Part shown: positions 936 through 59,500 of the stretch, one piece after another
Numbering within the stretch: the stretch's first letter is position 1
Layout of the letters: every line of letters begins with the position of its first letter
Assembly: GCA_965637545.1 (NCBI GenBank)
Contig: OZ281500.1
Location: 3,224,001 to 3,288,000, forward strand
DNA from: Phallusia mammillata
Lineage: Eukaryota
Direction: 5' to 3'
DNA: 64,000 bases
Notes under the pieces: generated by a model
What the model saw: the letters and a program-made list of their open reading frames with translations, nothing else
What the model was told of the DNA's origin: nothing
The model's database searches: none
Program-made: the position numbers and the translations under genes

Positions 936-3900
936 ATATAAACGACCACTAGATGTACCCAGTGAGCAAAATAAACCGGGTTGAGAGACGCACAACACGT
1001 TTTACTGGTCTCCACAAGGGCGTAAGAGTCTACTAGAGCAGAGCTCCGCTAATAATTATTATAATGAAACGCGAATCAAATTTGAGTTAACATACAGATT
1101 CTCGCGAGAAACTCTGGCCTGTAAAACCTACTTGGGTATTATAGACTCAACGTATGTCATGCATAGACTAAAGCTGCGCTTTTAGAGCAGGAGTAAAAAT
1201 GGGTCGCGACCCAAATTTGGGTTTTGTCAAAATGCTACGCGATGTTTTAAAACATAAGCTCCGAAAACATTAAGCAGAATTGCGTTTGACCTCTTGGTCC
1301 GACCTTCCGTCCTTTGTCTCTCATTTGGCTACGGAAAAAAAATTTAATATCTTACCACCGCCGATAAATGTATCATTTGCTAAAACGTTTTGGGCTGAAA
1401 TCCGACTAAATTACGTCACAGATATTCAACAAACAAACAGGGTCCGCACCCCCCTGAAAGTTTAAAGTTGGACCGGGCTTTGGTCTTGTACTTTCGGATT
1501 TGGACCAACTTACAATTTTGTACAAAGCGCATCCCCGCTTAACGTGTCGTTTTGACCTGAAAACGAAGTAGGCAAATGGAAATACTACTGACAGTTTGAC
1601 GTGTGAATTAAGTATTCAAGTAGTGTTTCGTTTAACAGAAGAAGTGAAAACACTTGCGTATTTCGAGGAGACATTTGAAGCGTGTCTACGAAATCAACCG
1701 TGACGGACAGAAATTAAACTGATTCGTACAATTAAAAAGATGGGCTATAGTTACCCAACAATCGATTCCATTACCAAGTGGTGCAGAATTTCTCAAAATA
1801 CAAGTTGGTTCGTATCCTGTTTATTCTCATCTGTTATTGACATGTAGCGGCTGTAGCCGTCGAAGTCGCCACGACTTTTCGAATCGGTGATGCATGCAAG
1901 CCTGTAAAACGCTCGCAGTTACAAGTCAATTCTGCAACAAGATACGATTGCTTTTGCGACTAGATGACGCAGACGATCACAAATATCATTAAAGTTGTCT
2001 GTTGGCAGAATACGACCCCGGTCAAAAGGAGTTTTGCTTTATCCACGCATTGTGCAGCTGGTGCGTAAAAACCTCATAAAGCATTGGGCTGTAATTAGCG
2101 TACTGCGTACATATATCGTACGTCTTGCGTTAAAATCAAAACCTATACTTTCATCTATTCGCAATTTTACGTGTAAGTTAGTGTTATGATAATCCTGACC
2201 GATTACTGCAACATTTCAGAGGGAAGTTAATCAAATAACGTTTGCAAGACCGGACTCGTATAAAGCATTTTAACGAAACCATGTCTTATCAAGGGCAGCT
2301 TGGATAGTGAATAGCCCTGGCTTTTGTTGTACTTTTGACAAATGTCAACAAATTTCAAATTACTCTTGTTTAGTTTTCCACCAGTTGAAAGGTACGAAAA
2401 CATGGCAATGTTATTCTTAACACTACAACGTAATCTTTTGCGTAGTGTGTTAGACCAAAAATCACACAACTATGCCAATTGTTTGTATGTTTGAGTAGAT
2501 ATCCAAGCTGTTTTGATAGAAGTCGTTGTTTTGTTTTGACACAATGACACTACGAGGAAAGAGCACCTGTTGTATCCTATTTCTTTCGGCCTGTGTTTTT
2601 AGGATGGGATGGAATTTGACTATATTGTCACTTAGGTTGAGTTTTAGTTTAATTTTAAAATTTTTGCTGTGCTAATACTGCGTACTTAAAAAAGTGACAG
2701 GACTTTTTTATAGTTCTAGTGTGGGTAAAAAGGGTTGATAAATATGGTCAAACAGCAAATATCTTCAAACAAGCATATTTAGGCGTGCACGGTTACTGCA
2801 AAAAAAACGGTAACGTGCAGCCAAAACGATTAAACTTCTAAAACAAGTTCATAAGAGGGGGCGTTTCAAACAGACACACGGATGTGTCGGCCTTTTTGCT
2901 GCAAAAACATACCACATTTTATAAACTATGATTTTAGGATACAAATTTTAAACTGAATTAATAAGATTTGTATCTTCCCAATAACAGAAACTCCACAATG
3001 GTTTCAGGAAAGCCTTTTTAGGTGGCAGCGTTGGGTCGTATTGTCAAAAAGTTCATAAATATTTTGTTTTGAGCGTCAGAATAAGGTACTATAGATCAGC
3101 GGTGGAATTTCAATGAATTATCTGTCAGTATACGAGGAAAAACAAACAAGGCGATTGTTAAACGCATGTCTTATTCTCTGAAAAACGACAAAGAAGCCTA
3201 TTATTAAGCATGGGTCCGACTTTTGCTAGTCAAACCCATATATTGTTTATTTAGGGATACTCAATAAAGAAGGGTTATACCAGATAAAAAACACTCTATT
3301 TCACCAGAGAGATGGCGTTTGTGTGATACAACAATATAAAACAGTATGTGCGTTTATAATTGTTAAAACTTTTGCAGATGTGGTAGATGCTGATACAAGG
3401 CAGGTCTCATTAATTTACACCAAATTCAGTTTGAAGATTTATTGCTATTTCAGAGCGCACTTTGGAGTACTGTCACAAGCACGTATGCAAGGTTGCCATT
3501 GACATCTAAATAGGAACAACCCAAAAGTTCGAATTTCATACAACACGAAACAAGCGTTAGAATCTTTATACGAGCTGTGGTATATCAAAAGCCATACTTT
3601 TTGCCAGAAACGGTATGTTTCAGGAACTCCTTGTTCATAGAAAACACTTCATGTATCTCACGACAGCTAAGGTCTAGGTTTACTTATAAGAGGGATTTGA
3701 CTGTCATTTCACGAAGGTTGTTCCTTTTAATTGTTGAAAATAAGACAAAAGGACTCAACTGAAAAACAACTACATTTCTTAGAAATAAGGACAATACATT
3801 GTTCTAGGACATTGCTATTCAAAATAAGGAGAAATCTTAGACAAGAGGACCGTATGGCAACCCTGCACGCATGGCAATGTTTTCTCCTACATCAAACGTC

Positions 3901-4195
3901 AGAATCCGGTGGCGAGAATCCACAAAAGAACGCAAGCGTCACATTTTGTAAGCGATTGTTTCGAGATGTGATAAAAAGCTTAAAGCGATGTAGACGGTAC
4001 ACAGGAAGTTTTATTTGGAATAGGTAATGAAAAAAAGATAGTTGATTTAGGCATATAATACTTTTTCATGCTATTGTCAGATGAAATAGTAACCGAGATA
4101 CGGATATTACGTTCAATGGTAAACAGCTTGTTGAATATAGGGTTTACATGTGCATATGATTTTAATACAGGACACTAATAAATAGTAATTCTAAA

Positions 4196-6772
4196 ATGTC
4201 TGCATGCAAAGTTGCGTCCGATTGCTTGAAGGATATAATAACAGACGTAATCATCAAATGTTTGGCAAATAAGCTGAAAAAACAATGTCGTCCTAATGGA
4301 GAGGAAATTAACCCACAGGAATCTGCAAAAACTTTGTATCAGTTGGGACTTGCGTATAAAGAGAAAAGTCCAGATAAGATCAGTATCATTCAAAGTGTTG
4401 CTTTAATGACATCAGCTGTGTTAAGGCAGCCCAACAATGCAGATGCTATCAGGAAAGATCTTGATGATGTATGCTTGCACATTTTAACTTTGGCAAAGGC
4501 TTCAAAGTTGGATACCCATTTTCTTAACATTGCAGTTGCTGAAGCAAAACAGAAAATCTCATTGCTTCGTGAAACAACCAAAATAAAGCTAGAAAAATTA
4601 AAACCAATTAGTGATGACTTAAAGGAAAACGAACGAGAAAAGGTAATACAAATCAAAGTGGCATATGTTAAAAAAATACAGAACTATGTAAGCGAAACTT
4701 ACACAAGTATTATGCAAATTATAGCAAATCACACACTCTCCATCTTATGGAAAGCACCATGTCAGTTTGCTTTGGTAGGAATGGGTTCATTGGCAAAAAA
4801 AGAAGTTACTCCATATTCTGACTTTGAAAGTATTATTGTTTTGGAAGACAAAATACAAAAAACTCCCAACTACCACAACGTTTTGGAGTATTTTCAGTGG
4901 TTTGCAACTATTTTCCAAATGATTCTTGTTCGCTTGGGGGAAACTTTACTCCGTTTCTTGGCAATTCCATGTCTTAACAATCCCCTAAACAAAAAAGAGG
5001 ATTGGTTTTATGATGCATACACTCCATGCGGAATTTGTCCTGATGGATTTGCTCCTCAAGCTAGCAAGAATCCAATGGGAAGACAAACAAAGACACAGAA
5101 AAAGCCTTGGACAACTGAACTTATCAAACCTGTCAGTGAAATGGTAAAGTACTTGGACAGTGAAGTGGATTTGAAAAATGGATATCATTTGGCAGATATG
5201 TTAAGCAGGTCAAGTTATGTTTTTGGAGACTTAGCTGTGTTTGAACAGTTTAGAACTAATGCTAAACAAAAAGCCGCCAAGTCCATGATTTTTAATCCAC
5301 ATAAACAGCAGCAAATCCAAAGTGACTACAGCCTGTACTCAATATACGAGGCTGACAATATTTTTACTATAGACATCAAACGATTTGTTTATAGAAGTTG
5401 TTCTTTGTTTGTTGAGGCATTAGGGCACCTATGTCGCAGCAAGGTATTAAACTGCTTTGACATTGTTGATGACCTAAAGACACGTAATGTAATAAGCAAA
5501 ACACACTTTAACAAACTTCAGTTTTCATTAGCAGTTGCTTTTGAAACACGGCTAAGGTTGTACAGCAACGCATCAAGCCAAGATGACATTCTCCATCAAG
5601 TTACTTATGATGGAATGCCATCATGCATAGAAAATATTTCTTCATGTATAGGCACCAGGGCGTTCATTCAAGGTTTGGGTATTGCAATGGTCCTGCAAGA
5701 GTATGTTGTCAAATGTTTTCATGAAGGTAAAAAGTTAAAACACACACATGTTTTACCATCACCAATACAAGAAGTTGCGCTAGCAACAGGTTTGAAACTT
5801 TATGGTTTTGCTGAAAGGCTGGTGCATGAACTTAAAGACAATCCTGATCATAAGAACCTAGAAGACCAAATCATACTGCTCATTGTTTACACAAAAAGTT
5901 TGCATGGGCTTGAGAAATACAGAGAGTGTATCAAAGTTATTAAATTGAATTTACCAATGCTTGAACAGCATGGGCTTATTGACTTGAAATGTTTTCTAAT
6001 GAGGCAATGTGCCATTTGCTTGCTTGTCCTAAAAAAATATAAAAAAGCACTTAAGTTCTTTAGAAAATTAAACTTTTACCATTTTTTTAAAATTTCAACT
6101 ACCATTCCTCCTCAAAAAATTAGTATGGGAATGGGTGATTGCTTTAAAAAACTTGGATGCAACAAAAAAGCTCTAAAATACATAAAATTTGCATACAATA
6201 AAACAAAAAATAATCTAGAAACCGAAAATGATCGTGATGGTTATGTTCAATTGATGATGAACTATATGGTATGTCTTCATCGCCTAGGTCAAAATGAGGA
6301 AGCGAGAATAGTTTGTCAAGATATCATAAACACAAGACAAACCCTCTATGTGAATGAGGAATCAGATGTCACATTAAATTTCGGATATGGTTTAATGGGA
6401 GGTATATTGCTTGGTCTAGAGAGATATGAAGAAGCTCTTGTTTATCTTAATAAGTCATGGAGGTGCTCACAGATTAGAACTGACTTTCTAATAGACACAA
6501 GTATCAGTCATGTCAGAAACAAAGCCCGGTGTCTGACATATTTAGGAAGATCATCTGAAGCCATAGAGTTTGTTACTCAATATGTTTATAATCATGAAAC
6601 AACTTCATGGAAAGAAAAAGTTAATTTGCTACAAAATCTTTCCAATGAGTTTGAACAATCGGGGTTTTATGAAGCCAGCATCCAGTGCAAGAATTTACTC
6701 TTTGAAATTCGACAACTGAATCTTTACCTTGTTGGTTATGAGCTATTTAATTACTTTTTAACACACACCTAG
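4196..6772 (+). CDS. Intronless 858-aa protein: N-terminal helical/TPR-like region, GlnD/GlnE/DUF294-like nucleotidyltransferase domain, DUF294_C-like helical domain, C-terminal TPR repeats
   Basis: Uninterrupted 2577-nt ORF. Pol-beta-superfamily signature FALVGMGSLAKKEVTPYSDFESIIVL. Downstream IDIKRFVYR...ALGHL...L...ETRLRLY matches the substrate-binding helical domain pattern. TPR-like units such as MGMGDCFKKLGCNKKALKYIKFA, NYMVCLHRLGQNEEARIVCQ, MGGILLGLERYEEALVYLNKS and NKARCLTYLGRSSEAIEF. Confidence 0.85.
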   Translation: MSACKVASDCLKDIITDVIIKCLANKLKKQCRPNGEEINPQESAKTLYQLGLAYKEKSPDKISIIQSVALMTSAVLRQPNNADAIRKDLDDVCLHILTLAKASKLDTHFLNIAVAEAKQKISLLRETTKIKLEKLKPISDDLKENEREKVIQIKVAYVKKIQNYVSETYTSIMQIIANHTLSILWKAPCQFALVGMGSLAKKEVTPYSDFESIIVLEDKIQKTPNYHNVLEYFQWFATIFQMILVRLGETLLRFLAIPCLNNPLNKKEDWFYDAYTPCGICPDGFAPQASKNPMGRQTKTQKKPWTTELIKPVSEMVKYLDSEVDLKNGYHLADMLSRSSYVFGDLAVFEQFRTNAKQKAAKSMIFNPHKQQQIQSDYSLYSIYEADNIFTIDIKRFVYRSCSLFVEALGHLCRSKVLNCFDIVDDLKTRNVISKTHFNKLQFSLAVAFETRLRLYSNASSQDDILHQVTYDGMPSCIENISSCIGTRAFIQGLGIAMVLQEYVVKCFHEGKKLKHTHVLPSPIQEVALATGLKLYGFAERLVHELKDNPDHKNLEDQIILLIVYTKSLHGLEKYRECIKVIKLNLPMLEQHGLIDLKCFLMRQCAICLLVLKKYKKALKFFRKLNFYHFFKISTTIPPQKISMGMGDCFKKLGCNKKALKYIKFAYNKTKNNLETENDRDGYVQLMMNYMVCLHRLGQNEEARIVCQDIINTRQTLYVNEESDVTLNFGYGLMGGILLGLERYEEALVYLNKSWRCSQIRTDFLIDTSISHVRNKARCLTYLGRSSEAIEFVTQYVYNHETTSWKEKVNLLQNLSNEFEQSGFYEASIQCKNLLFEIRQLNLYLVGYELFNYFLTHT

Positions 6773-8608
6773 AGGCATTTATATTTATACACTATAACGA
6801 TTTGTTTTGTAATTATGCATATTGTGTATCTTTACTCTGTTATTGTTGAGTTTAATTGGTTTGCTTTGTCATTATATTTTCACTTTTTGACCATTGTTTT
6901 AGCACACACTATTCACTATATTAGTCTTACACTGTGATAGTTACTTTTTCTTCGTTTCTAGGATTCCCCTCTTTCCTGTCATTAATTTACGCTTGATTGC
7001 TTGTATCACTACCCAGGTGGGCCTTTGGTCATCATGTGATTGTGATTGTTTCTTCGACGTACTTGTCTATGCATGCTCGCAATTTTAGAAAATTTCCCTT
7101 CGGAAATTTCATGGCCTTTTCAAAAATTACATTGCATTGCTACAAAGTGGGTTTTTCTGCTGCAAATGTGCCATCATTGTTTTACTAGAATATGTTTGTT
7201 TAAACATACGTAATACATTGTTACCAAATAAACATAGCAAATATGGATATCAATAAGCCTTTTTACATGATCGAATCGAATCGTATCATTGATGCGCATT
7301 GTGTGACATCGAGATTTCGATTCGCTAAAGCGTAAAATTACATGTTGCTGAACCGAATCGTATTCAAGGTTTTCAACTTCGCAAAAACGATATAATGGTT
7401 ATTGTAAAGTGATATACAAACATAAGGTCTCTTAATTGTTAATTTTAAAGTATTTTTAGACTTTTAGTCTATTCTTCCAAAAAAATCTGAATTAATTTGT
7501 GTGCAGCAGTTGTTTGCGTCGAGTTTAGACATACCAAAGAGCAATTCGCCCTCAGGTCAGGTCAATTTACTGACCAACGCGAGAGATCTCTGTGAAGCCA
7601 AGGCTGCCAAATTAAGCTACAAAATGTCGTGCTTCAAATGAACGATAGCCCGCTAATTCTGTTTAATTGTGTAACTTTCATCATTCTCTTGTATTGGCGC
7701 TTTTCATGTAATCGCCCTTTCTTGCGTTCACATACCTACGACATAGTATTTATGTGGTGCCTTTCGTTGCGTAATGAGTGTGTTATCCTCGGTTGCCTGT
7801 GAAGTTGTACGCTTGTTGAATGCAGTTTCTTTAGAACTGAATGCCAGATTACTGTGAATTTGGCAGTTGTATGTATTAGCATTATGTCTTGTGTTTAATA
7901 ATTGTTTGTGTGTTTCTTTTATTAAAATCACTTGGTGGAGTGGAACTAGGTTTGGTTTATAAACAGGTTTTACTTTCATAAAGTAATTTAACTTTAACTA
8001 AAAGTTCGTTTATACACAAAAAGCAATAAGCGAATTAGTGAACTCATGCAATAATAAAATAACTAGATAATATAATCTATATTAACGTAAGATTATACTC
8101 TAAATTTAGTGGCGTTTTTATAATAGCTCAAATAGTTAATTTAGACTAAAAAGGCTACCTAGAAACGTTACAGCACCCAACAGCCAAAAAACAATTGTTG
8201 CATGTCACTCAGAACATTTTGTAAGGCCACAGTTAGCTGACCAATACCCTAGTTAAAATAAACCAATTGAGACAACTTACCAGTATCTATTTTGCTTTTA
8301 CATCAATCAGGATGAACAGAAAATAAATCCAGGCAAAGGCTTGGTAACCAGAATATGCAAGTATCATATGTACATTCATCAGAACCATATATACATCAAT
8401 TATATGCCCAATAGTTTCACTAGATAAGGAAAAGATAATTTTTAAATGTAAGTAAATAGTGTAATATAAATGTGAATGTATCATGCCAACAATATTAACT
8501 TGGTATAATGTAAGAAACTTGTTTGTTCAATATGTCTATTTACAGTAGCATTAGCATTGTCACTTTAAACCCATTTGCCCGACTTAACAGGCAATTGTGT
8601 AAGACCTA

Positions 8609-9044: not shown

Positions 9045-10541
9045 CTAGATATATGCACATCAATTAAAAAACTAAATCAAACAAAACTTACAGACATTCT
9101 TGTAATTTTACTAAAGCATTATTTTAATTCCTTAAAAGTTGTAGAAAGAATCACAGTGCAAGCAAGTTGGAAACAGATCAGTGTAGCAGATCACCTAAAA
9201 ATTCTGTCACCATATTTATTAGCTTAGTTAATGATGCAAGGTCTTGGTATAAGCAAACCATTGAACTAGGTAAACTAGATTTTAGAACACAAACATCCTA
9301 AACTTCCGTCTTGTCTTGTAAACTATAGGCTAAAGTAATTATAGGCTAAACCTAAATCTTAACAAATGTGGTTTATTTGTTTCGTGTCGTGTTATTTTGT
9401 GCAGTTTTATCTCATCAAAATTTTGGTTTAAGGAAAACACAAACAGAAGTTTGTTTATTTCTGAAATTTTTCAGCACTACTGTGAGGGTTTGACAAGTTA
9501 AGGCTACTCAATATTAAAAGTGCCTATTAAAAAGTTTGAAACTTAGATGATTTGAGGTGCCAACCCAATTCTAACATATTTAACAAAATTATTTTTCAAC
9601 ATAAAAGAGTTTTTCTATCAATAAATCCTTTAATAAAAATGCAGTCAAAAGCCTATAGAGACATAGTAAATTTATATTTTCACACAATGCGTTGTTTTTA
9701 ATCCGAGTTCGGTCCCGTCCAACTACGCAAACTGTTGTCCACCAGCAAGCAGTTATTTACTGTTTGTAAAAACTGCACCATTTTAAAGCTCCGCTGCGAA
9801 AATGTGGGAATACCCAGGGAGATCCCCTATTTCGCAAATTATAAATCATGACCGTGTTTACCATAGATAACTTACCAGTAGGCCTAATCTAAGTTGTTTA
9901 CGAATAAATTAGTTAAAATTGTTCATAAACATAATCAGATAAACAACAGACTCAAACCATTGCTACCAAAAACGCAAACATGAATTAAGCGTAGCGTTTG
10001 CCAACAACATATATTTTTTTCTGTGAAACATTTTCAAAATTTTGTTCTTTTATTTCTAGAGTTTCGAAATTACATTTACCAATATGCATTGTGCACAAAA
10101 CTTTTGTCCTAATCTTAAATTCAAAAAAATATACGTTATTAGCCTATAGTTATTGCCACAAATTTACCCGTATTGTGCTTTGAACTCGCCCATAACATTA
10201 ACAAACCAAGTTATTTTCGCCCGTGATTTTTTCCTAAATCAGTCAAAAATGTTTAAAATACAATCTCCAAATTAATTGCTGCAATGTCTGCAAACACCAA
10301 ATCCAGTGCAGCATTTGTGGCATTGCAGACTGGCGCCACTTGGTCAAGTACACTTGCAATCCAAAATGTCAAATCTGTAGTGAAACTTTCAAACACGCTT
10401 CTGAATTTGAGCGTAAAGTAGGTGGTTTGTTTAGGACACGTTCCAAAAAGCTCATTGTTTCACTTTTAGACATTTTTGCCAGTCACTCCTGGAGCCTATT
10501 TAAGCTCCACATAAGCCAGTTTAGTTTATTTTCTAGACGAG

Positions 10542-11639
10542 ATGTTGCTGTACGTGTTGCTTAAGCTAGCTCTTCTCTTGACAGTTGTAAGTAGGTCTTA
10601 CAGCCATCTAAACCACCAACAAACTTATACGGTTTGCCGATCGCTTGACTCATTGTTTGAGCAACAACCCACAGTTCCTTGTAGCAAGTCGACCATAAGG
10701 GGTTCCCCAGGCCGACCTGGAAAGCAGGGTCCACAAGGTTTTAAGGGAGATACTATAAAGGGTCCCCCAGGCCGACCAGGAAAGCAGGGTCCACAAGGTT
10801 TTAAGGGAGATACTATAAAGGGTCCCCCAGGCCGACCTGGAGAACAGGGACCACAAGGGTTTAAGAGAAATACTATAAGAGGTCCACCAAGCCACCCTGG
10901 AAAGCAGGGTCAGCAAGGTTTTAAGGGAGGTACTGGTCCGGCTGGCCCTCCTAGTCCCAAACCAGTGGTGAATTGGACCAGAATTGAACATCGTATACAA
11001 GAAATAATAAACGGTATGATAGTTTCTGTATTAACAACTGCATTATTTTAAATAAAATATTACAGCAAAATATGCTTAGGAGATGTATTTATTAGCAGAC
11101 AAAAGAATATGTTCTGGAGTCGTTTACAAAGATCATTGCTACTGGCTACCTATGGTTGTTGCACGATCTGACAGTAACGGTGGAAAATCGGCAGCTACCA
11201 ATGTTTGCAGTTCTTACCGTGCAACATTGGTCGATATAGAATCATCTGAAATGTATAAAGTACTTTACAACTACATACAGAACGCTTGGATGGTTTTTGT
11301 TGATCAACCAACATACGATAATGTTGACGTGTGGCTTGCTTCCACATATCAGGTGTGTTGGCTTGTAAAACAAAGTTTTTTAAAAAAAGCTTTCTAATTT
11401 TTTAGGTGGTAATGCATTTGTTGAACAAGTTAACTTAAAAACAAGACAACAATTTCACCCTACAGAATACCAACTGTAAACCTCATAAGTTTACATCACA
11501 AAAACAATTTTGTACGTCTTTTATGTACAGAATGGAAGTGTCCTGAGTTCCATACATGGAAGCGTTTACACACAAAATGATCGGGATGTTTGCAGCACAC
11601 GAAAATGACCCTTTCCCGGTGCCGTTTTGCCGCCTTTAA
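10542..11639 (+). pseudogene. Collectin-like gene copy A (signal peptide, collagen, C-type lectin domain) with frameshifted exon 3
   Basis: Exons 10542-11013, 11099-11352 and 11531-11639 are phase-compatible and paralogous to copy B. Exon 3 lacks the WYNGHPG...VAPY segment of copy B, so it stops at TGA 11606-11608, while the original ending IGMF...FPVPFCRL* survives in another frame. Confidence 0.75.
10692..10931 (+). repeat. Four tandem 60-bp coding repeats forming the collagen region of copy A
   Basis: Units start at 10692, 10752, 10812 and 10872 and encode TI(K/R)GPPGRPGKQGPQGFKGD. Confidence 0.9.
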
Positions 11640-11800
11640 ATGTTGGTTTACATGTGTTATTATGTTTTATTATTCACACCAAACCGTAGTTTTTATGTAC
11701 AATACGTGTTTCTGCAGTATGTCTGTAATAAAATAGCTCAAAATTCAGTTTTCTTTACAAGATTTTTTAGAATCCAGTTTTTATTTACCGTTTTTTTAAA

Positions 11801-12250
11801 GAAGTCGTTGCTACTGGCTACCGCGGATTGTTGCAAAATACTATGGTACCGGTGGAAAGTCAGCAGTTGCAAATATTTGTAGTTCCTAGAGAGCCACATT
11901 GGTTGACATAGAGACTGAAGAAATGTTCAATGTACTTTACAACTACATACAAAAAGCTAGGGTGGCGTACATTGATCGACCGACAACCGATTTTGTCGAC
12001 GTGTGGCTGGCTACAACTTACAGGGTAAACTAACTAGGGCGAAAGATTGTTGCCTATTTTAAAATATCAAAAAACTTTACAAACTGTAATACTTACGTAA
12101 AAAATAGTCGCGTTTTATACAGAATTATGAGTTAATAACAAGTACTTGCAATTTTAATTAAGCTTGGGCATGATTCAATACACAAGCTTCTTTCGTGCTG
12201 TCACTATTTATAACAAAATTGTTGCTTTAGAACGGAAATGCGTTTAAAAG
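11801..12250 (+). pseudogene. Partial collectin-like copy (CTLD exon 2 plus the start of exon 3)
   Basis: 11801-12024 reads SRCYWLPRIVAKYYGTGGKSAVANICSS*RATLVDIETEEMFNVLYNYIQKARVAYIDRPTTDFVDVWLATTYR, with in-frame TAG at 11887-11889 and a GT donor. The exon 3 start (AG|AACGGAAATGCG, about 12231) breaks off. No exon 1. Confidence 0.8.
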
Positions 12251-13790: not shown

Positions 13791-14532
13791 ACTGTACACG
13801 GCTTTCCAATACGATTTGAATAATGGCTGCAGTGTCAATTGTAGAAGCCCGATACGCCTAAAAAGCGCCTATTATTACATCCACAGTATTAATTAAACGT
13901 TTTGCCTAAAATTGAAATTCTTTATGCAGTTGTGTCTATTTTCCATGATTCTGGCGCATATACGTTTTAACGTTCGTTGGACTGAAACACTTTCGTTTAT
14001 AAAAATAACGAGTTAATAAAATGTATTGACTGTTAAACGCATTTTTAACGATTGAGGGAGTTTGCAAAGTTCAACTCCGCATAGTTAGTAACAATAAATA
14101 CAAACTTTCGGACTTGCGCTGGAGCTGCAAAAAGTTGGTGTTAATAACTTAAACAGCGTTGTGTTCTCTTCTTTATAATACGCAGTATTTTAACAAATAT
14201 TTCTGTTTGATGCTTTATTAAACTTGGCACATTTAAAATACGATTATTCAGGGTTGGCTGATTATCTGTTATACCGAATAAAAAGTTTTACAAGTTTGAC
14301 CAGTTGGTGTCCTTCAATATAGGACACCAACTGTGTACAATCCATTTTGAAAAAATTAGCTTTAGTTGCCAGCAAATGTCAATAAGTTTTCGGGAATGTT
14401 ATGGCTGCTCAATTCGAGGCTTTGCAAAAAAATGTTCCTTTACCGCGTGCACCTTTTTCGGTTGCGTCATTCTTGCCATTTATATATGATTCCAAGTGAC
14501 AGAAATGACTTAGTTGCCTTTAGTAAGGCAAG

Positions 14533-15702
14533 ATGAATGTTATGTTTAGAATCGCACTTCTCTTGGCAGTTGTTAGTATGGCATGTAGTCATGACAACCA
14601 CAAACAAAATTATTTGGTTTGTCGGCCGCTTGACAGCTTGTTTGAGCAACAACCTACAAGTTCTTTAAACCAGTCAACCTTAAGGGGTCCACCAGGCAGG
14701 CCAGGTAAACGCGGGCCTAGAGGAGAGCAAGGTATGCAGGGCCAGCCTGGTCCGATTGGACCGCAGCCATTGATAAATTGGACTCAAATCGACAACCGTA
14801 TAACTGAAATAATAAATGGTAAGACATGTATCCAACCTTGTCTGTTGTAAAGAATGAAACTGTGGCCAGAATTCTTGTCAACAAAATCGTATTTCCAAAC
14901 TTTAAAATAGATATTTATCTGGTCAATGCTACCGTAGCATTGCACATAAAATGACACTCAAATGTTTTAAAATTAATTTCTTAAACATGCACATAAATAC
15001 CGAATTATTCAGGGGCTGCTCTTGTAACGCTAGTCGTCAAACGTAATGTTTTTTCTTCATTTGCAGAAAAACGAATCTGTACGGGAATCGTGTACAGAAA
15101 TCATTGCTACTGGCTACCGCATACTGTTGCAAAATTCTATGGTACCGGAGGAAAGTCGCCAGCTGCAAACGTTTGCAGTTCGTACGGGGCCACATTGGTA
15201 GACATAGAGACCGAGGAAATGTACAATGTACTCTACATCTACATACAGAAAGCTTGGGTGGCGTACATTGATCGACCCACAAACGATTATGTTGACGTGT
15301 GGCTGGCCACAACTTACAGGGTAGGGTTAACATTACAAATTTCACAGTTTTTTGAGGGCGAAAAATTGTTGCCGATAGTGTAATCTCAATAAAATTAACA
15401 AAATGTATTACTTATGGAAAAAAATAGTCACGTTTATAAGAAATTGTGATTTAGTGTAAGTATTTGCAAATTAAGCTTCTTTTATGTTGCCACTAATCTT
15501 AACAAAATTGACTTGTTAGAACGGAAATGCGGTAAGTTCCAGAGGTGGGAATGTTTATACACGATGGTATAATGGCCACCCTGGCAGTGATACTGGCATC
15601 GGATGGATTGTGTCGACCGAACCTGGGAGAGTTGCGCCTTACATCGGTATGCACACAACCAGCGAGACGTACTCACGCCCTGTGCCGTTTTGTCGCCTGT
15701 AA
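14533..15702 (+). CDS. Collectin-like protein copy B (signal peptide, short collagen, neck, C-type lectin domain), apparently intact
   Basis: Exons 14533-14818, 15067-15320 and 15520-15702 (phases 1 and 0). Signal peptide MFRIALLLAVVSMACS; about 9 Gly-X-Y triplets; CTLD motifs CYW, VCSSYGATLVDIET, VWLA and terminal PFCRL*. Confidence 0.85.
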
Positions 15703-16575: not shown

Positions 16576-16699
16576 TGCTTGGTGACCGGCTGATTCGGTA
16601 TGGCGCCTTTTAATGGGCCTGGCGTATACTGTAATCCGTGTGCGACCCCGTTATAGGTTACAACTATGTTTACATGGATTTCCCTACCGACGGGGCAAA

Positions 16700-17070
16700 T
16701 TGCAGTGTTCATTTGCAAGTTGTGAATTCGACAATGGGAAATTTGCTTGCGATTGCAACGATGGTTTCGAGTTAGATAGGAAGCAGACAAATTACGCAGA
16801 CAATCACCAGTGTGACGTCAGACCGAGCAGTTATAATGAAATAGTAAAACATTTTTTCTTGTACGATCTTTAACAACCCAAACAAAAGGTTTCTCGTGCG
16901 ATGACGTGCACGAGTGTGGAAAAAGTGTTTAACAACCCAAAGACGGTTTCTCGTGCGATGACGTGAACGAGTGTGAATTGGACCGTACGCCCCGTGCACA
17001 ATCACCGTCGGTGGATTCGAGTGCTCTTGCGACAAAGGTTTCATCGACAACGGGGGGAGTTATACGCTGG
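16700..17070 (+). pseudogene. Decayed EGF / calcium-binding EGF module fragment
   Basis: CSFASCEFDNGKFACDCNDGFEL; then KGFSCDDVHECGKSV*QPKDGFSCDDVNECEL (internal duplication with a stop); then a frameshift into CTITVGGFECSCDKGFIDNGGSY and a GTGAGT donor. Confidence 0.6.
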
Positions 17071-17439
17071 TGAGTTGTTGTTTTTGGTTTAAACACTACA
17101 GTAGTTTGTGTAGTTTTTGGGGAAGCATCTTGGTTAAGTTAAGAACCTTGCTTTTTTATTGTTCTGACGCTACCAAAGCTTGTACTGTAGCCATTAACCT
17201 TTAAATAACAGTCTCTTAATGAACCTTTCTTTGTTGGCCCCTTAGCTGCAAGGTTGGCGGACATCAAGTTTAATGACGACCTTTCAATACTTTACGTGTT
17301 TTGTTTTTTCCAATCCATAGATTTTTTTATGTTATTAAACTTATGTAAATATTACATTTAGGTCGGTTTATATGCCATTGAAGGGCGTTTAATAGCATTT
17401 TTTGAAATTTAACTGCGATATGCTTATGCAATGGTAAGT

Positions 17440-38772: not shown

Positions 38773-41700
38773 GTTTGTGTGTGTGTAAAGAACAAATACC
38801 TTAGCAGGTCAGATAAAATGACATTGCAGGCCAGAACTGGCTAGCAGACTGCAGTTTTGGTGACCTATACTAATACTTATAAACCTCAAATTGTGCATTT
38901 AAAGTTCTAGTTTCTGCAATTTAAGGTGATTTTGCCAAGTTTTGACTGGTCATTCGTGTTCCAAATATACAGGAGATAAATAACTGCATATTCATAAAAA
39001 GAAAGTATAATTTGATAGTTTTAAAACAAGGTTCTCCTGCACATGGCACCCAGTTCCACCTTTAGACAGCTGAGGACATATCCTAAATAGATAAACTAAA
39101 ACTAACGATCTTGGAGAAATACACTTTTTATTTGCAACATATTTGTTTTTTCAACAAGTTTTGCCTAGAATCTCTCTTTCAAAGATCATTTACACTGTCC
39201 ACAAATTCTCAGTTGCTCTTGCAGCCGACATTGATAACACATACCACCATGCTCATTTCAAAACAAACTTTCAAAAAGCATTTCCCATTTAAAAAAACGT
39301 TTTATAGTGCAAATTATAACAAACGTACAATAAAGAAGAAACATTTCTGACGGACTGAATTGTTGCACTATATAAGTGGTTACTCAGGAAACACAAAGTT
39401 AACAACAAGAATGAGTGCATGGTACAAGAGAATCATTATTAATGTGACAAACACACTAGTACGCAAGTTTTCATTTGCCTCTGAAGTAAATGCATTAGTA
39501 ATCTTTGTGCACACTCGTCCAGCATAATCGGCTACACTCGAAGAAAATTTGGCACATCGGTTGTTGTGAGAAATGGATTTTGGGTTGCGAATAGCTTCAG
39601 CAAGCAATGCTACTATGTTGTCAATTGTGTGCAACAAATCTTTGGCCAAGATGGAAAGATTGTTCAGAATAAAACTGTTGTGAAGTCTGTTTTCCCAGTC
39701 GTGCTCATTAGATGAAGAGGCTGACTTACTTGGCGGGATGTAGATTCTTTTTGGTTTACGACATAAGACTTTGATTGGAAGTGTTTTTCGCACAGGTATT
39801 TTCCGCTTTGGTTTGTTAATAGCTTTGTTCACAATCGGCATTGCTTTTGCAGCTTGTCGCATTTTTGCCTTCTTGATAGCTTTAGTCACAGTTGGCATAG
39901 CTTTCTGGGCCTGTCGCATTGTTGACTTTTTTATCACCTTTGCATTCAGTTTATTGGCAGGTGCTGTTTGGCTTGCCAACTTTTTTGTGGTTGCATGTAG
40001 TTTTTCATGAAGCACTTCCTCTGAAATCTTGGCATTACCGCCAGACTTGGTACTAGCTTGTAGGTTATTATCGTTTGGAGCAGAAGATTGATAGCCGCTT
40101 TGAGGAAGGGGTTGATTTGTTGCACCAAACTTAACAGACTTCACTGCTCGTTGGACAACATGATTTTGTACAGGTCTTGATATGAAAGTTTGCTTTCTCA
40201 AAGATTTTATAATTCTTGGCGATGGTTCTGTTCTAACACAATTTCTGACATTTACAGCAGTAAAAGGCACAATTTTAACAGGATTAACAGGAGGAAGCAG
40301 AAAACAATTCTTGATTTCCAAAAAATATGTACCAATCTTTAGAAGTTTTCTGTCATTCGAAAGAGGGGTTACATTTCGGACAATCCATGTGATAATATTT
40401 TTCTGTTCAGGTTTATTAATTGCAGTTTGTTTAGCAACCACTTTGGACTTATTGGTAACTGAAACTGAGTGCAATCTTTTGTCCACAGTAACTTTGGCAG
40501 CTAGACGGTTGTCATATTTTTGTGCATTCTCTACTTGAATATTTTCCCAATTTATGTTCTTCAGATGATGGTTATCATTTTCATCATGTTGCAGTTTGTC
40601 AGAAAGTGCTTGCTTGACATGCAGGGTATGCTGGTTAAGTTTATTAGGAGTTGGAGGCATTGGCACATCACGCAACTTGCGAGGAAATCCCACCACAGCC
40701 ACACTGTTTAGAAACGAGACAGACAAATTTCCTTTAGAAGGATACAAGAGAGGCTTCTTGCTTTTCAACCACTCGTCACTGGGCAGTGCTTGGTTTAATC
40801 TAACTGGTAATAATGAGAGAAGGGAAAGGAAAAAGGAAAAGGGGTGGAAAAAAGAAAAAGAGTTAGTAGTAACGGAGAGAAATATTTTAATGAAAAGCAA
40901 TAGAAAGTTTTTGCAATTGTACAAATAACCAATATTTGTTTGAATTTTGCTAACAGAAAAAATCACCACAACATATTTTCAACATTTTAAAAATACAGGC
41001 CTGATACAATTTCTATCTACATGCAACAGCTGCTAAGTTCTGGAGCTACTCATAAACATTGTATTAGCAGAAAGTGTTGGTCAAATTATGCAGTGGTCAT
41101 TACATTTCCTGAATTGTGACAACTTGGAACCAGATTAGCAACTAAAGAAAGTTGCTTGACCCACCTTTTTTGTTTTCCTGTGTTTTTTTCTCTGTTTCCT
41201 TTTCTATGGGTTCCACCTTCTACAAAGTGCAAAGAAATTGATTACTTCACATTGCACATTTAAATATAACTAGAAGAGTGGCTTTCTGATATACTTCCAT
41301 TTTATATATTCTATACGATATTTACCAATTTACTATACACATCATTTGATCTACACATATGAGTGTTTTTGTAAACAAAAACTAATGGGTCCCCACCTGC
41401 ATGTTTGTGCGGATTTACGGTAAACAAATGTTGCGGTGATTTTTAGATTCTTGAAGACAAATATTTAGAAAGCATTAACCCAACAATAAAAAAAAGTTGT
41501 TTGTATTCTTTTTGCACTTTTATTGTCATGTAATTACAAAAACACTAAAAAAACGTAACGAATACTTTAATTTAATCTCTTGCTTTGACCCAGATATTGT
41601 CGTCCAAGGTCGGGTTTCAAACAAAATTTTTTTTAGAAAGCTGTAACAGTTGTGTTACAGACACTTTAAATTAAATAGCAATTTGCTACAAGTGTGTACA

Positions 41701-56553: not shown

Positions 56554-59500
56554 TTATTCCCCTGAACTTGGCGCGTGGTCTAACTGCGCGTAAGTACAGT
56601 TCGATTCCCGGCCATTATGAGATGACAAGGAACAGTGTGACGCCATATAGAGGTTATTGTTCGCATTAACGTTGTTGAAAAGTCCCGGGTTCTCATCAAT
56701 TCCAGCGTATATCCCTTCCTCTTCAAAGGAATCGTTAAAAGCGGCACCCCTGAAATCATTTCCGTTGCTTGTGGACATGGACTTTGAAACGATTGATGCG
56801 TCATAACCGCTCTTTGTTTTGTTCCGGAGCCTGTTTATCATTGTTACGGGACTGGGAATCACCGACAAACTGCGTTTTTTCTTCCGTATTGAATCCTTTC
56901 CGGTGTTTCTGTGTGTTCAAGCTTGATTAAATCGTCCTTATTTGATTTGTTGTGATGCATGTATTCAGTTTTGCAATCGTACCCTCTTATTTTAGCGTGC
57001 GTGAAATTTATTTCTGCCACACCACCGATTAATGTAAAAAGCGTGTTAAAGTCGAACGTAAAAAAGCTGTGACATAACACTGCAGTTTATTAAGCGAGCG
57101 AATTCCGAATCTTTTTGTGTGCCTTATATGTTGCCAACAATAACCTATGTTACAGAAGTTTAAATAATCACTACAGAAACAAATTACTGTGTGCTACATT
57201 ACCTGACACCATTTTTTAAGTGAGTCTGGTAAACAGGGGGTCACACCCTACATACCCAGTAAACTACTTACTCTTGTGCGTCCTCACTCCCAGCACTGAA
57301 TGATGATTCACTCGAAACGTCAGGGATACACGAATAGGTTTCCGAATCACCATCTGCACGCGTTACTGGTTGTAATTGCATTTGTGGCAGAAAACTTCAA
57401 TGTTAACTGCACTGCGTCATTCTTATATTAAGTGCTGATGTCATGTATTGTTGTCCAAAAAGACATTTAAAATAACTGCACGTCGCAAATGGAAAGACGA
57501 CTCAAATACTTTCAAAAGTTTTGTGCTGATAAGTTCAGGCGTGAAGGCATTTATTGCGTAATTTTAAATCTTTAATATGTAATTGTGCAACATTTTTGTA
57601 TTAATGTCACATACTGATTTTTCATTATTTTTTGAACGTTTTCTTGTTGCAAAATTAGAATTGCGTTTGAAGAGTTTTTCTTGTTGCAAAATTGGAATTT
57701 ATTTTTAACGGGATTGACGTAAAAAGTCTGATGTCAAATTACGTACGGCCATCCAATTAGGAATTAACGTCAGCACACATTCGTATAATTATGTCAAGTT
57801 AGCTCAAACTTACCCATCACGGTTTCAGAACTGATTGTTACCTCTGCGACCTGAAACCGCAAAAAATTAAGGTCAGACGTCACTTTACATACGTACAATG
57901 TACGAAAAATAGTAGTGAAAAAGTTTAAGTTAAAGGGTAGATTGACCACAGTGAAGCTTCAGCAATTTTAAATTTGCCCTTATTGTTAGGAAATAAACCA
58001 GACTTTGGCATGTCAGGTCACGAAAGAGACGAAGAGATTTTTTTTAGGTATTTCGGGAACGGTTGCGACAAAATCTATACGTTAAGGAAGTCACGTGTGG
58101 TGACGTAAAACGGAAGGACGTTTACTCACCTTGGGTGCGTTCTTGATCGTCCTTTTTGGTGTTTTGATCGGCGACGAATTAAGGTTGGTCCGCACAACAG
58201 TCCACTCATTTTCCACTCTGTAAGGAGAAAAGAACGTTCAGGATTAATATAAGGTTTGCGTTATATGTAAGGGGATTTTACAACGTAAAGCCGGGAATAA
58301 TGGAGAAATTACCCGGCTGTAACATTGCACCACAAACATAACAATCAACATTGAATGACCATAATTTCAGTTATATCCATCAAAACATTTAACGTGTACC
58401 CATCATAACATCACAACATCAGCTTTTACGACATTTCATGTGACGTCAGCTTTTAACCGTTTTAATGACATTGAAGAGCAATATCATAAAAGCAAGCTCA
58501 TAAAACTTTTACCAGTTAAAAACACAAAAAATGCCCAGGTTTTCAATTAAAGGAAAATCGTTGATTGATCACTATTGGCACATCTACACAAGAGGAAAAA
58601 TTAAATCGCCAAAACGACATTTTTCTATGCTAAAGTATTCATGTATGGACGTTTGTACAGAGTTCTAGAGAGTGTTACTTACTGGCTGGCAGCTTTGCGC
58701 TGTTCAGCGGCTTGTATGTTCTTTTTTGAAGGAGGTGGAGGCCGTGTAGGCGCCGGCTTTTTAGTAACTGCATGTAAACAATTGCAATACATCACATACT
58801 AAATTTAATCCACGTACCTTTCTCGCTAACGATTGCCACAATCAATATAACTTAAGAAATCAAATCAACCGACGTGTGAACATAATAAAGCACCAGTAAA
58901 TAAACCAGAAATAATACCTTCTTGTGGTTGTTTGGGTGGAGCCGTTTGTGGTCTGGGAGGGGGCGGAACGCTAGGACGCTTCAATCTTGGAGACTTTAAT
59001 GGGGACTTTTTGGTGGAAAGTGGACTAGCGGAAACTTCAGAAGCAGCTGAAACAGTTGGTGTCACGTCTGGAGTACGTGCGGGACCCGCTGTTGACTTGT
59101 CTAAAGAATTACTGGCAGTTGGAGGCAAAGGCGGAGGTGCGCTTGGAAGTTCTGGTGATGGCGGTGGAAATGCAATGACTGAAACTTGGGACTCATCAAT
59201 GCAGGTGTACACTTGATCATGATCTTCATCAGGGTCTGAACATATCGGATTGTCGTCGGTAGTCGGCAATGAAACATTAGGTGAAGGAAGCTGTCGCGTT
59301 GATTGAAATTGGCGAGTCAAGGTGGGCGATAAGTTTACAGGATGTGGGTCCATGGGGCGGTTTGGAAGGGTTGAAACTTTGGGTTGTGGTTTAGGTCTAG
59401 GCGGGGTAGCGGTTTTCGGAGGACGTGGGGGATTTGGGGTTCCGTTTAGGTGTTTTGGCTTGGTGGAGATTGCTGGTGGCGGTTTGGGTGAGTCCACTTT

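What the first reader, a model, noticed from the sequence alone, without database searches (positions are those of the whole stretch)
4196..6772. Intronless bacterial-style nucleotidyltransferase + TPR gene: candidate horizontally acquired nucleotidylating sensor/effector
Seen: a 2.6-kb single-exon ORF in a neighbourhood where every other gene has many introns, with a GMGSLAKKEVTPYSDFE motif, a DUF294_C-like helical domain and a TPR array. Established: GS-x-D-x-D/E is the Pol-beta-fold catalytic signature of GlnD/GlnE, and of toxin-antitoxin MNTs, OAS and cGAS. GlnD/DUF294-type enzymes are mainly prokaryotic, and TPR arrays are ligand-sensing modules. Inference: an animal NTase-TPR protein acquired from bacteria (I recall similar architectures in intracellular bacteria, unverified) that may AMPylate/UMPylate targets or make a nucleotide signal. 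It sits next to collectin-like genes, which is compatible with an uncharacterised innate-immune system.
Basis: partly seen in the sequence, partly recalled or inferred. Interest (0 to 1): 0.75.

Follow-up and report, generated by a model that had tools for sequence, protein, structure and literature searches.

The report
Sea-squirt DrrA-like nucleotidyltransferase-TPR gene copy
This is a real, intron-free gene of a sea-squirt-type animal that joins a bacterial-style protein-tagging enzyme (the fold of Legionella DrrA and E. coli GlnE) to a TPR binding arm. It is one shortened copy among at least 55 in this genome, and I found no published study of the animal family.

Summary
Window 4196-6772 (+) is an uninterrupted 858-codon ORF with a G-x11-D-x-E nucleotidyltransferase motif, a Pfam DUF294 match above threshold and a TPR array. 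A confident AlphaFold model matches DrrA (Z 22) and both GlnE domains (Z 18-19), far above every other solved chain.

It is not a lone or recent acquisition. The genome holds at least 55 matching stretches, mostly tandem arrays on the same contig. The family is also large in Ciona, Clavelina and amphioxus, and is present in an octocoral. Tunicate and amphioxus copies are sister clades.

The nearest bacterial relatives are all in intracellular symbionts: Neochlamydia, other Chlamydiota, Holosporaceae and a gammaproteobacterial MAG. My trees disagree on who gave the gene to whom.

This copy has lost the last ~200 residues (extra TPRs) that its paralogues keep. Transposon-like repeats lie in the stretch that replaces the paralogues' 3' end. 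Its own branch still shows purifying selection (pN/pS 0.15). A frameshifting allele may segregate.

An immune role is suggested only by context: a CARD fusion in amphioxus, an NB-ARC fusion in a symbiont, and gene-family dynamics. Activity was not tested, and transcription rests on runs that are only guessed to be RNA.

The scan had already reported this family at eight or more other places in this genome.

The parts
4196..6772 (+). Single-exon ORF of 858 codons plus stop: nucleotidyltransferase-TPR protein, C-terminally shortened copy
4196..4495 (+). N-terminal helical cap (aa 1-100) made of TPR-like hairpins
   Evidence: AF2 helices 2-99, pLDDT above 90. TPR-type matches at Z 7-8 over residues 12-99, which is a weak level for helical repeats
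4508..5731 (+). GlnE/DrrA-fold nucleotidyltransferase core plus helical substrate-binding-type domain (aa 105-512)
   Evidence: DrrA 6yx5_B Z 22.0-22.8, rmsd 4.0-4.1, 322 of 339 residues. GlnE 1v4a Z 19.4 and 3k7d Z 17.8-18.6. The next unrelated chain scores Z 8.0 or less. Pfam DUF294 29.5 bits
4784..4828 (+). Catalytic motif G197-S198-x10-D209-F-E211 (G-x11-D-x-E)
   Evidence: Read from the translation. G197, S198, S208, D209 and F210 are invariant and E211 is at least 90% conserved in 58-61 homologues. DrrA's motif G-x11-D-x-D is given in PMC12409994
4795..4801 (+). A7 run inside the motif region. A one-base-shorter form is seen in other runs and would end the frame after 241 residues
5753..6709 (+). 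TPR array (aa 520-838), about eight helical hairpins
   Evidence: LGN/Pins TPR 4wnd_A Z 21.6, plus kinesin light chain and Rap/NprR TPRs. Pfam TPR_1 and TPR_12
6710..6772 (+). Twenty codons plus the stop with no counterpart in paralogues. Homology to paralogues ends at about 6709
3875..4260 (+). 5' flank and first codons shared (86%) with the 5' flanks of two paralogues: candidate family promoter or 5'UTR
6711..8178 (.). Stretch that replaces the paralogues' last ~140-200 codons and 3' flank. 6711-7247 matched only itself in the genome search. 7248-7538 is a ~290-bp dispersed repeat. 7541-8172 is a ~650-bp dispersed repeat. Flank homology with paralogue L003 resumes at 8179

Best explanation
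The ORF encodes a cytosolic-looking protein of three parts: a short TPR-like cap, a GlnE/DrrA-type nucleotidyltransferase with all family-invariant residues, and an array of about eight TPRs. The most likely mechanism is as follows. The TPR arm (and perhaps the cap) binds a protein or peptide. The enzyme domain then transfers a nucleoside monophosphate (AMP or UMP) from an NTP onto a side-chain hydroxyl of a bound protein, as GlnE does to glutamine synthetase and DrrA does to Rab1. The gene is one member of a large, tandemly amplified, intronless family that chordate invertebrates have inherited vertically. That family shares a specific subfamily of the fold with effector-like proteins of intracellular bacteria. 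This copy has lost the terminal TPRs but has stayed under purifying selection. What is shown: ORF, motif, fold, paralogue number, truncation, selection, phylogenetic placement. What is inferred: catalysis, a protein substrate, TPR-guided targeting, and any defence role.
For: ORF and domains. Models: pLDDT 89.7 and pTM 0.85 for the full length; 89.9 and 0.91 for residues 1-530. Search of 48,161 chains without Foldseek: DrrA Z 22.0, GlnE 19.4 and 17.8, all unrelated chains 8.0 or less. Motif G-x11-D-x-E is invariant across 58-61 homologues, together with D273, D283 and K291. Selection: dN/dS against the two closest paralogues is 0.26-0.27 overall, 0.07-0.15 in the enzyme core and 0.27-0.40 in the TPRs. 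The branch leading to this copy has pN/pS 0.15, against 0.32-0.33 for its two sisters. Family size: at least 55 stretches, 8 of them with internal stops; 1292 clusters at 50% identity in public data. Context pointing to a sensor-effector use: NTase + NB-ARC + TPR in a gammaproteobacterial MAG; CARD + NTase + TPR in amphioxus, with CARD at 47.8 bits; F-box + NTase + TPR in Neochlamydia (PMC4209131). Possible transcription: contigs 97-98% identical cover 4255-6609 and not the unique flanks, in three runs whose small size suggests RNA.
Against: No activity, substrate or expression pattern was tested. The runs are only guessed to be RNA. One of their contigs continues 5' into a sequence identical to paralogues L004-L006, not to this copy, so they may come from a mosaic allele or an unassembled near-copy. 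Nothing covers the novel 3' tail. The copy lacks the conserved C-terminal TPRs. A one-base-shorter A run that destroys the frame at the active site appears in contigs of two studies. Fold similarity does not fix the substrate class: relatives in the wider superfamily also modify small molecules.
Confidence: 0.6

Rival explanations
1. This copy is a decaying or already dead member of the family. The truncation removed part of the recognition arm and the locus is drifting to a pseudogene, whatever the family does.
For: The ~200 C-terminal residues that nearly all paralogues keep are missing, and the stretch that replaces them holds unique sequence plus two dispersed repeats. A frameshifting A6 allele is seen in X1 and X2, and at minority depth in the DNA run X8. 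Eight of the 55 family stretches already carry stops.
Against: The 858-codon frame is intact. All family-invariant residues are present. The branch leading to this copy has the lowest pN/pS of its trio, 0.15. Paralogues of 830-950 aa also exist with open frames.
Confidence: 0.25
2. The enzyme makes a nucleotide second messenger or modifies a small molecule or nucleic acid, in the manner of cGAS, OAS, CD-NTases or aminoglycoside nucleotidyltransferases, rather than tagging proteins.
For: All share the Pol-beta-type GS...D-x-D/E core. Aminoglycoside nucleotidyltransferases appear at Z 7.0-7.3. Classical DUF294 proteins have no established substrate.
Against: The three solved chains that match over the whole domain at Z 18-22 are protein adenylyltransferases or their deadenylylating twin. 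No cGAS, OAS or CD-NTase chain is among the 50 entries listed, where Z falls to 6.4 at rank 50. Pfam gives SidM_N and GlnE as the secondary matches.
Confidence: 0.1
3. The gene is a recent bacterial insertion or bacterial contamination in the assembly.
For: It is intronless and has a bacterial-type domain. The closest bacterial relatives live inside eukaryotic cells.
Against: G+C is 32-37%, like its surroundings. It is flanked by this genome's own dispersed repeats and by a 5' flank shared with paralogues. There are at least 55 paralogues on several large contigs. Identity to bacterial relatives is only 23-31%. It sits deep inside a tunicate clade that is sister to amphioxus.
Confidence: 0.02
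4. The protein works mainly as a non-catalytic TPR scaffold, with the enzyme fold kept only as a nucleotide-binding or regulatory module.
For: GlnE itself holds a twin domain with a different (phosphorolytic) activity. TPR proteins are often scaffolds.
Against: The catalytic motif and many surrounding residues are invariant across distant homologues. The enzyme core is the most constrained part of the protein, with dN/dS 0.07-0.15.
Confidence: 0.08

Closest known systems
DrrA/SidM adenylyltransferase domain of Legionella pneumophila (PDB 6yx5, 3nku)
   Same: It is the best structural match: Z 22.0-22.8 over 322 of 339 residues. The G-x11-D-x-[DE] motif is the same. Pfam SidM_N matches weakly here (16.7 bits) and above threshold in the octocoral relative (29.5 bits).
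   Different: Sequence identity is 14-15%. DrrA carries GEF and PI4P-binding domains and is a secreted effector. This protein carries TPRs and is encoded by an animal. Its substrate is unknown.
GlnE, glutamine synthetase adenylyltransferase (PDB 1v4a, 3k7d)
   Same: Same fold, including the helical domain after the core (Z 17.8-19.4). Weak Pfam GlnE match.
   Different: GlnE has two tandem copies of the fold with opposing activities and a PII-responsive linker. This protein has one copy, with TPRs, and no link to nitrogen control.
Pfam DUF294 / GlnD-type bacterial nucleotidyltransferases (PF03445, PF10335)
   Same: It scores above the DUF294 gathering threshold, and the nearest ESM Atlas clusters are bacterial DUF294/DUF294_C.
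   Different: Classical DUF294 proteins (with cNMP and CBS domains) score only 17-29 bits against the animal-type profile, while symbiont proteins score 80-216 bits. They form a separate clade. None of 40 evenly drawn Pseudomonadota genomes matched the animal domain.
Neochlamydia NEX2 family (F-box + DUF294 + TPR; Domman et al. 2014, PMC4209131)
   Same: Same NTase-TPR core, and also a large lineage-specific expansion. It falls in the same subfamily in the tree.
   Different: It is bacterial, has an N-terminal F-box and sometimes an OTU domain, and is presumed to be an effector acting on host ubiquitination. The animal proteins lack the F-box.
FICD/HYPE, the metazoan TPR-containing AMPylase
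   Same: It works like what is proposed here: TPRs joined to an enzyme that AMPylates proteins (PMC12409994).
   Different: The catalytic fold is unrelated (Fic). FICD is a single-copy, membrane-anchored ER protein. There is no homology.
STAND/NLR-type sensors with TPR arms (NB-ARC-TPR)
   Same: A symbiont relative has the architecture NTase + NB-ARC + DUF7779 + TPR and an amphioxus relative has CARD + NTase + TPR. The family also shows tandem expansion with frequent pseudogenes.
   Different: This protein has no NTPase switch domain, and no oligomerisation or ligand is known.

Membership tests
GlnE/DrrA-type adenylyltransferase fold | Pol-beta-type core followed by a helical domain, superposable over the whole domain on solved members | tested here: met
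   DrrA Z 22.0 (322 aa, rmsd 4.1), GlnE Z 19.4 and 17.8. The next unrelated chain scores 8.0 or less among 48,161 chains
GlnE/DrrA-type adenylyltransferase fold | Catalytic motif G-x11-[DE]-x-[DE] | tested here: met
   G197-x11-D209-F-E211 in the translation, invariant or nearly so in 58-61 homologues. The motif is as stated for SidM in PMC12409994
GlnE/DrrA-type adenylyltransferase fold | Transfer of AMP (or another NMP) to a protein hydroxyl | not testable with these tools
   Needs a biochemical assay
Pfam DUF294 (PF03445) | Score at or above the curated gathering threshold | tested here: met
   29.5 bits against a cut-off of 21, aa 156-248
Pfam DUF294_C (PF10335) | Score at or above the curated gathering threshold | tested here: not met
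   No match at E up to 1 in this copy. Paralogue L002 gives E 0.081. The region is covered by the fold match only
TPR repeat proteins | Helical hairpin repeats recognised by TPR models and by fold | tested here: met
   TPR_1 31.3 bits against a cut-off of 27.8. LGN TPR Z 21.6 over 312 residues
cGAS/OAS/CD-NTase signalling nucleotidyltransferases | Mab21/CD-NTase-type fold around the GS...D-x-D core | tested here: not met
   No such chain is among the 50 entries listed, where Z falls to 6.4 at rank 50. No Pfam match. A weak or missing match is not proof of difference
Recently horizontally acquired gene | Closest relatives bacterial, few or no relatives in related animals | tested here: not met
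   At least 55 paralogues. The clade includes Ciona and Clavelina and is sister to amphioxus. Bacterial relatives are 23-31% identical
Animal/symbiont NTase-TPR subfamily | Shared signature peptides and a strong match to the animal-type domain profile, separate from classical DUF294 and GlnD | tested here: met
   The two patterns used picked out only symbiont genomes. Profile scores were 80-216 bits for symbionts and 17-29 bits for classical DUF294. They form separate clades in three trees
Collectins (the neighbouring genes, not the finding itself) | Collagen triple helix followed by a C-type lectin domain | tested here: inconclusive
   Collagen 31.7 and 21.8 bits. Lectin_C only 15.4 and 14.5 bits, below the cut-off of 22.6, in the two following exons. 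The exons were not joined

The most novel reading that the evidence does not exclude
Invertebrate chordates (and at least one octocoral) encode their own large, diversifying family of DrrA/GlnE-type protein AMPylases. In these proteins the TPR arm senses a pathogen or danger ligand and the enzyme tags a host or microbial protein. That would be a third class of animal AMPylase beside FICD and SelO, working as an innate-immune sensor-effector. It would also be the counterpart, or the source, of the NTase-TPR effectors of intracellular bacteria.
Probability: 0.2. Interest if true: 0.85.

Novelty: new variant of a known kind. Interest (0 to 1): 0.55.

Why it matters
A 2025 review of AMPylation gives FICD as the only eukaryotic FIC-domain protein and treats the adenylyltransferase fold only through bacterial GlnE and the Legionella effector DrrA (PMC12409994); that SelO is the other animal AMPylase comes from my own knowledge and from the abstract of PMC12663964. 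If the tunicate/amphioxus family is active, animals carry the same enzyme fold that pathogens use against them, amplified into dozens of copies with variable binding arms. That would open a testable question about a new post-translational branch of invertebrate immunity or cell signalling. It would also bear on gene traffic between animals and their intracellular bacteria. This particular copy adds a natural truncation of the binding arm that has nevertheless stayed under selection.

Tried and rejected
- The listing of cluster members gave no names.
- A second homologue search with P0014 returned only unnamed proteins. The large 'unk' clade is called tunicate-like only because it nests among Clavelina rows.
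- A sequence search of the PDB with the single protein found nothing. The profile search was flooded by TPR proteins and said nothing about the enzyme domain.
- The AU test of symbiont monophyly under the mixture model did not finish in two 300-s runs. The reduced LG+G4 tree made the test unnecessary, but it contradicted the nesting seen in the other trees.
- PADLOC gave only a 14.7-bit match to a candidate system over the motif, which is not meaningful.
- Rfam found nothing in the window.
- A transposon-borne origin of the gene was considered and rejected. There are no terminal repeats around it, only a 34-nt inverted pair at 74% complementarity. The copies stand in spaced tandem arrays.
- A downstream exon carrying the missing C-terminus was looked for and not found anywhere in the 64 kb.
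- Complex prediction was not used, because no partner is known.
Full report

Yes. Window 4196-6772 (+) is one uninterrupted ORF of 858 codons. It is the only ORF of 100 aa or more in 3000-8000. Its G+C content (32-37%) does not differ from its surroundings.

Pfam gives DUF294 at 29.5 bits (gathering threshold 21) over aa 156-248. It gives several TPR models over aa 600-800 (TPR_1 at 31.3 bits against 27.8), and weak SidM_N and GlnE matches. NCBIfam gives only weak matches to [protein-PII] uridylyltransferase models.

That is the G-x11-[DE]-x-[DE] signature given for the DrrA/SidM adenylyltransferase in a 2025 review (PMC12409994).

**2. Fold**

Two AlphaFold models were built on alignments of 58 and 61 homologues:
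- The full-length model has pLDDT 89.7 and pTM 0.85.
- The model of residues 1-530 has pLDDT 89.9 and pTM 0.91.

The N-terminal model was searched against 48,161 representative chains without a Foldseek pre-filter:
- DrrA (6yx5_B) scores Z 22.0, rmsd 4.1, over 322 of 339 residues.
- The GlnE N-terminal domain (1v4a) scores Z 19.4.
- The GlnE adenylylation domain (3k7d) scores Z 17.8.
- The next two rows are DrrA fragments, and everything unrelated is at Z 8.0 or less.

A second look at Foldseek's own hits for the full model agrees, with DrrA at Z 22.8. It also shows that residues 520-844 superpose on eight-repeat TPR domains: LGN/Pins at Z 21.6, and kinesin light chain and Rap/NprR receptors at lower Z. 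Residues 12-99 resemble a few TPR hairpins at Z 7-8, which is a weak level for helical repeats.

No cGAS, OAS or CD-NTase chain appears among the 50 entries listed.

**3. Conservation**

In alignments with 57-60 homologues at 27-49% identity, G197, S198, E203, S208, D209, F210, D273, D283, G284 and K291 are invariant, among others. E211 is at least 90% conserved. This copy therefore keeps every family-invariant residue.

**4. It is one of many**

A six-frame search of the window's own genome (240 Mb, 312 contigs) finds 55 matching stretches. Only 53 of 147 first-look candidates were scored, so this is a lower bound. Most lie on the same contig, C7, and eight carry internal stops.

The window copy is the last of six same-strand copies between C7:3,181,016 and 3,230,769. 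Its closest relatives (72% protein identity) are not these neighbours (50-52%). They are copies 0.87 Mb upstream and 1.48 Mb downstream (L002, L003).

About 320 bp of 5' flank is shared at 86% with the 5' flanks of two other paralogues. No terminal repeats surround the gene, so a transposon-borne origin is unlikely.

**5. This copy is shortened**

Aligned with nine paralogues, the protein stops being homologous at about residue 838. It ends after 20 unrelated residues, while the others continue for roughly 100-240 more. In L002 that extra part contains further TPRs (TPR_12, TPR_2).

tblastn with four paralogue C-termini finds nothing more anywhere in the 64-kb window. At the DNA level:
- Homology with L003 runs over 4261-6710 and resumes only at 8179-8330.
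- In between, 6711-7247 matched only itself in the genome search.
- 7248-7538 is a ~290-bp dispersed repeat, with at least 24 copies at 91-94%.
- 7541-8172 is a ~650-bp dispersed repeat, at 80-92%.

The terminal part of the recognition arm was therefore lost in a rearrangement, and the replacing stretch holds two dispersed repeats.

**6. Is it still under selection?**

Against L002 and L003, dN/dS is 0.26-0.27 overall, 0.07-0.15 in the enzyme core and 0.27-0.40 in the TPR array.

I also assigned changes to single branches, using only codons where the other two copies agree. The branch to the window copy has pN/pS 0.15, against 0.33 (L002) and 0.32 (L003). This crude parsimony count treats the three copies alike. 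It shows no relaxation of constraint on this copy.

**7. Transcription and a possible null allele**

Three runs of one study (X1-X3) hold contigs 97-98% identical to 4255-6609. Each run holds 23-32 Mb of contigs, far less than the genome, and the tool only guesses that they are RNA. They hold none of the unique flanks 3300-4204 and 6920-7462. A DNA run of the same organism (X8) covers everything. No joint lies inside the ORF. This pattern is what an unspliced mRNA would give, but there are three cautions:
- The RNA label is a guess.
- One contig continues upstream of 4304 into 30 bases identical to paralogues L004-L006 and 13 mismatches away from this copy. The source may therefore be a mosaic allele or an unassembled near-copy.
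- Nothing covers 6610-6772, so the novel tail is not shown to be expressed.

The X1 and X2 contigs, and a contig at 56 of 326 summed depth in X8, carry six instead of seven A at 4795-4801. That would end the protein at 241 residues, before D209. A frameshifted allele may therefore segregate. An assembly artefact at a homopolymer is not excluded.

**8. Who else has it?**

With the window protein as query, 683 proteins pass E 0.001 among 8000 scored candidates. The named ones are all Clavelina lepadiformis and Ciona intestinalis, and the best identity is 40%.

An exhaustive HMMER pass over 1.84 billion cluster representatives, using the enzyme domain alone, gives 1292 clusters at E 0.001 or better, 711 at 1e-10 and 334 at 1e-30.

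A pattern scan of 185,579 bacterial and archaeal species genomes found relatives (23-31% identity) in only three:
- a Rhabdochlamydiaceae MAG;
- Holosporaceae 'Namur';
- a gammaproteobacterial MAG with 17-18 copies.

None of 40 other evenly drawn genomes of that phylum matched the animal domain. Twenty of 26 genomes in a second draw have a classical DUF294 or GlnD by the Pfam model.

Using the gammaproteobacterial domain as query brought in named relatives: many Branchiostoma proteins, many Neochlamydia proteins, Parachlamydiaceae MAGs, the Holosporaceae genome and the octocoral Xenia.

A profile of the animal domain scores 80-216 bits on the symbiont proteins with a full-length match but only 17-29 bits on classical DUF294. 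This is therefore a distinct subfamily shared by some animals and intracellular bacteria.

**9. Trees**

Three maximum-likelihood trees of the enzyme domain were rooted on GlnD. All three place classical DUF294 outside the animal and symbiont rows.

- The tunicate-type rows (this genome, Ciona, Clavelina and the unnamed proteins) form one clade with a long stem in every tree: 100, 97 and 100 SH-aLRT.
- Rows from this genome are monophyletic (97-99), which points to lineage-specific expansion.
- With amphioxus added, the amphioxus clade (98) is sister to the tunicate clade (91). Xenia sits unresolved on a long branch.
- The relation to bacteria is not robust. Under the mixture model the animal rows nest in a grade of symbiont rows (supports 80-92). 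With fewer rows and LG+G4 the symbiont rows form a clade (97) sister to the animals (97).
- The AU test under the mixture model did not finish.

My conclusion is that the gene in this window was inherited vertically within chordates. A transfer between animals and intracellular bacteria happened long ago, and its direction is open. No vertebrate protein appeared among the named hits, but absence from vertebrates was not tested rigorously.

**10. Clues to function from architecture**

In the gammaproteobacterial MAG the same enzyme domain stands in several contexts:
- before a TPR_12 array (L061), the same plan as the animal protein;
- before NB-ARC + DUF7779 + TPR (L028), which is a STAND/NLR-like plan with the enzyme in the effector position;
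- before a predicted AAA-ATPase (L021).

A Holosporaceae protein is TPR-NTase-TPR, and a Rhabdochlamydiaceae protein joins the domain to a methyltransferase. Neochlamydia proteins carry an F-box in front, which is the NEX2 family of Domman et al. 2014 (PMC4209131). One amphioxus protein has an N-terminal CARD (47.8 bits, cut-off 23.9) before the enzyme and TPRs.

Together with the tandem amplification, the frequent pseudogenes and the less constrained TPR arm, this fits a sensor-effector family used in biological conflict. It is circumstantial evidence.

**11. Neighbours**

Downstream on the + strand lie two tandem multi-exon genes. Each has a collagen exon (10515-11048 and 14527-14847) followed by an exon with a sub-threshold C-type lectin match (E 0.06 and 0.03). 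EGF-like exons lie at 16.6-17.2 kb. I searched these exons one by one and did not join them. 'Collectin-like' is plausible but unproven, and adjacency alone says nothing about a shared system.

**12. Literature**

Twenty-two papers in the held library mention DUF294, and 19 were listed. Judged from their titles and abstracts, none treats an animal protein. I opened two of them, PMC4209131 and PMC3710099. The only paper that also mentions tetratricopeptide repeats is the Neochlamydia paper. The HEPN survey (PMC3710099) lists GlnD/GlnE/DUF294_C as bacterial. The 2025 AMPylation review treats the adenylyltransferase class only through GlnE and SidM.

**13. Earlier notes of this scan**

Eight earlier notes describe the same family elsewhere in this genome. 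They report a GlnE/DrrA fold, 55-100 copies, octocoral and invertebrate-chordate relatives, and symbiont relatives. I used them as leads and re-derived each point here.

New for this locus:
- the C-terminal truncation and its repeat-filled replacement;
- the branch-specific constraint;
- the possible frameshift allele;
- the mosaic 5' end in the other individuals' contigs;
- the disagreement between trees about the direction of transfer.

**14. Verdict**

The locus is a shortened but still constrained member of a large animal family of DrrA/GlnE-fold nucleotidyltransferase-TPR proteins, on which I found no published study. It is most likely a TPR-guided protein NMP-transferase (confidence 0.6). 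An immune sensor-effector role is the attractive but unproven extension (probability about 0.2).

Noticed in passing
window 10515-12030 and 14527-15699 (+): Two tandem multi-exon genes. Each has a collagen triple-helix exon followed by an exon with a weak C-type-lectin-like match (collectin-like). The two copies are clearly paralogous in translation.
   Followed up: partly
window 16586-17198 (+): Exon-sized frames with weak EGF-type matches (EGF_3 at 19.8-20.6 bits, below threshold).
   Followed up: partly
window 3485-3866, 7248-7538 and 7541-8172: Three dispersed repeat families of this genome, about 400, 290 and 650 bp long. The first has 1333 first-look candidates at 73-82% identity. The second is 91-94% identical to at least 24 copies. 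The third is 80-92% identical to its copies. The last two lie in the stretch that replaces the paralogues' 3' end.
   Followed up: partly
window 4304 (5' end of a contig of run X1): In another individual's contig the body of this gene (97.9% identical) continues upstream into 30 bases identical to paralogues L004-L006. This suggests gene conversion or a mosaic near-copy that is absent from the assembly.
   Followed up: partly
window 39380-40969 (-) and 58865-60460 (-): Two long ORFs (529 and 531 aa, GTG starts) with no Pfam match. The first also has no PHROGs match. They are unrelated to each other, and the second is rich in proline.
   Followed up: partly
L028 (gammaproteobacterial MAG OZ257147.1, 642384-651022) and 16-17 sister genes: A symbiont-like MAG of about 3 Mb carries 17-18 copies of the animal-type NTase inside open frames of 900-3000 aa. 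One of those scanned has the plan NTase + NB-ARC + DUF7779 + TPR.
   Followed up: partly
P0458 (Branchiostoma hybrid, LOC144907263): An amphioxus family member has an N-terminal CARD domain (47.8 bits) in front of the NTase and TPR array.
   Followed up: partly
Rfam at gathering thresholds found no family anywhere in the window.
   Followed up: partly
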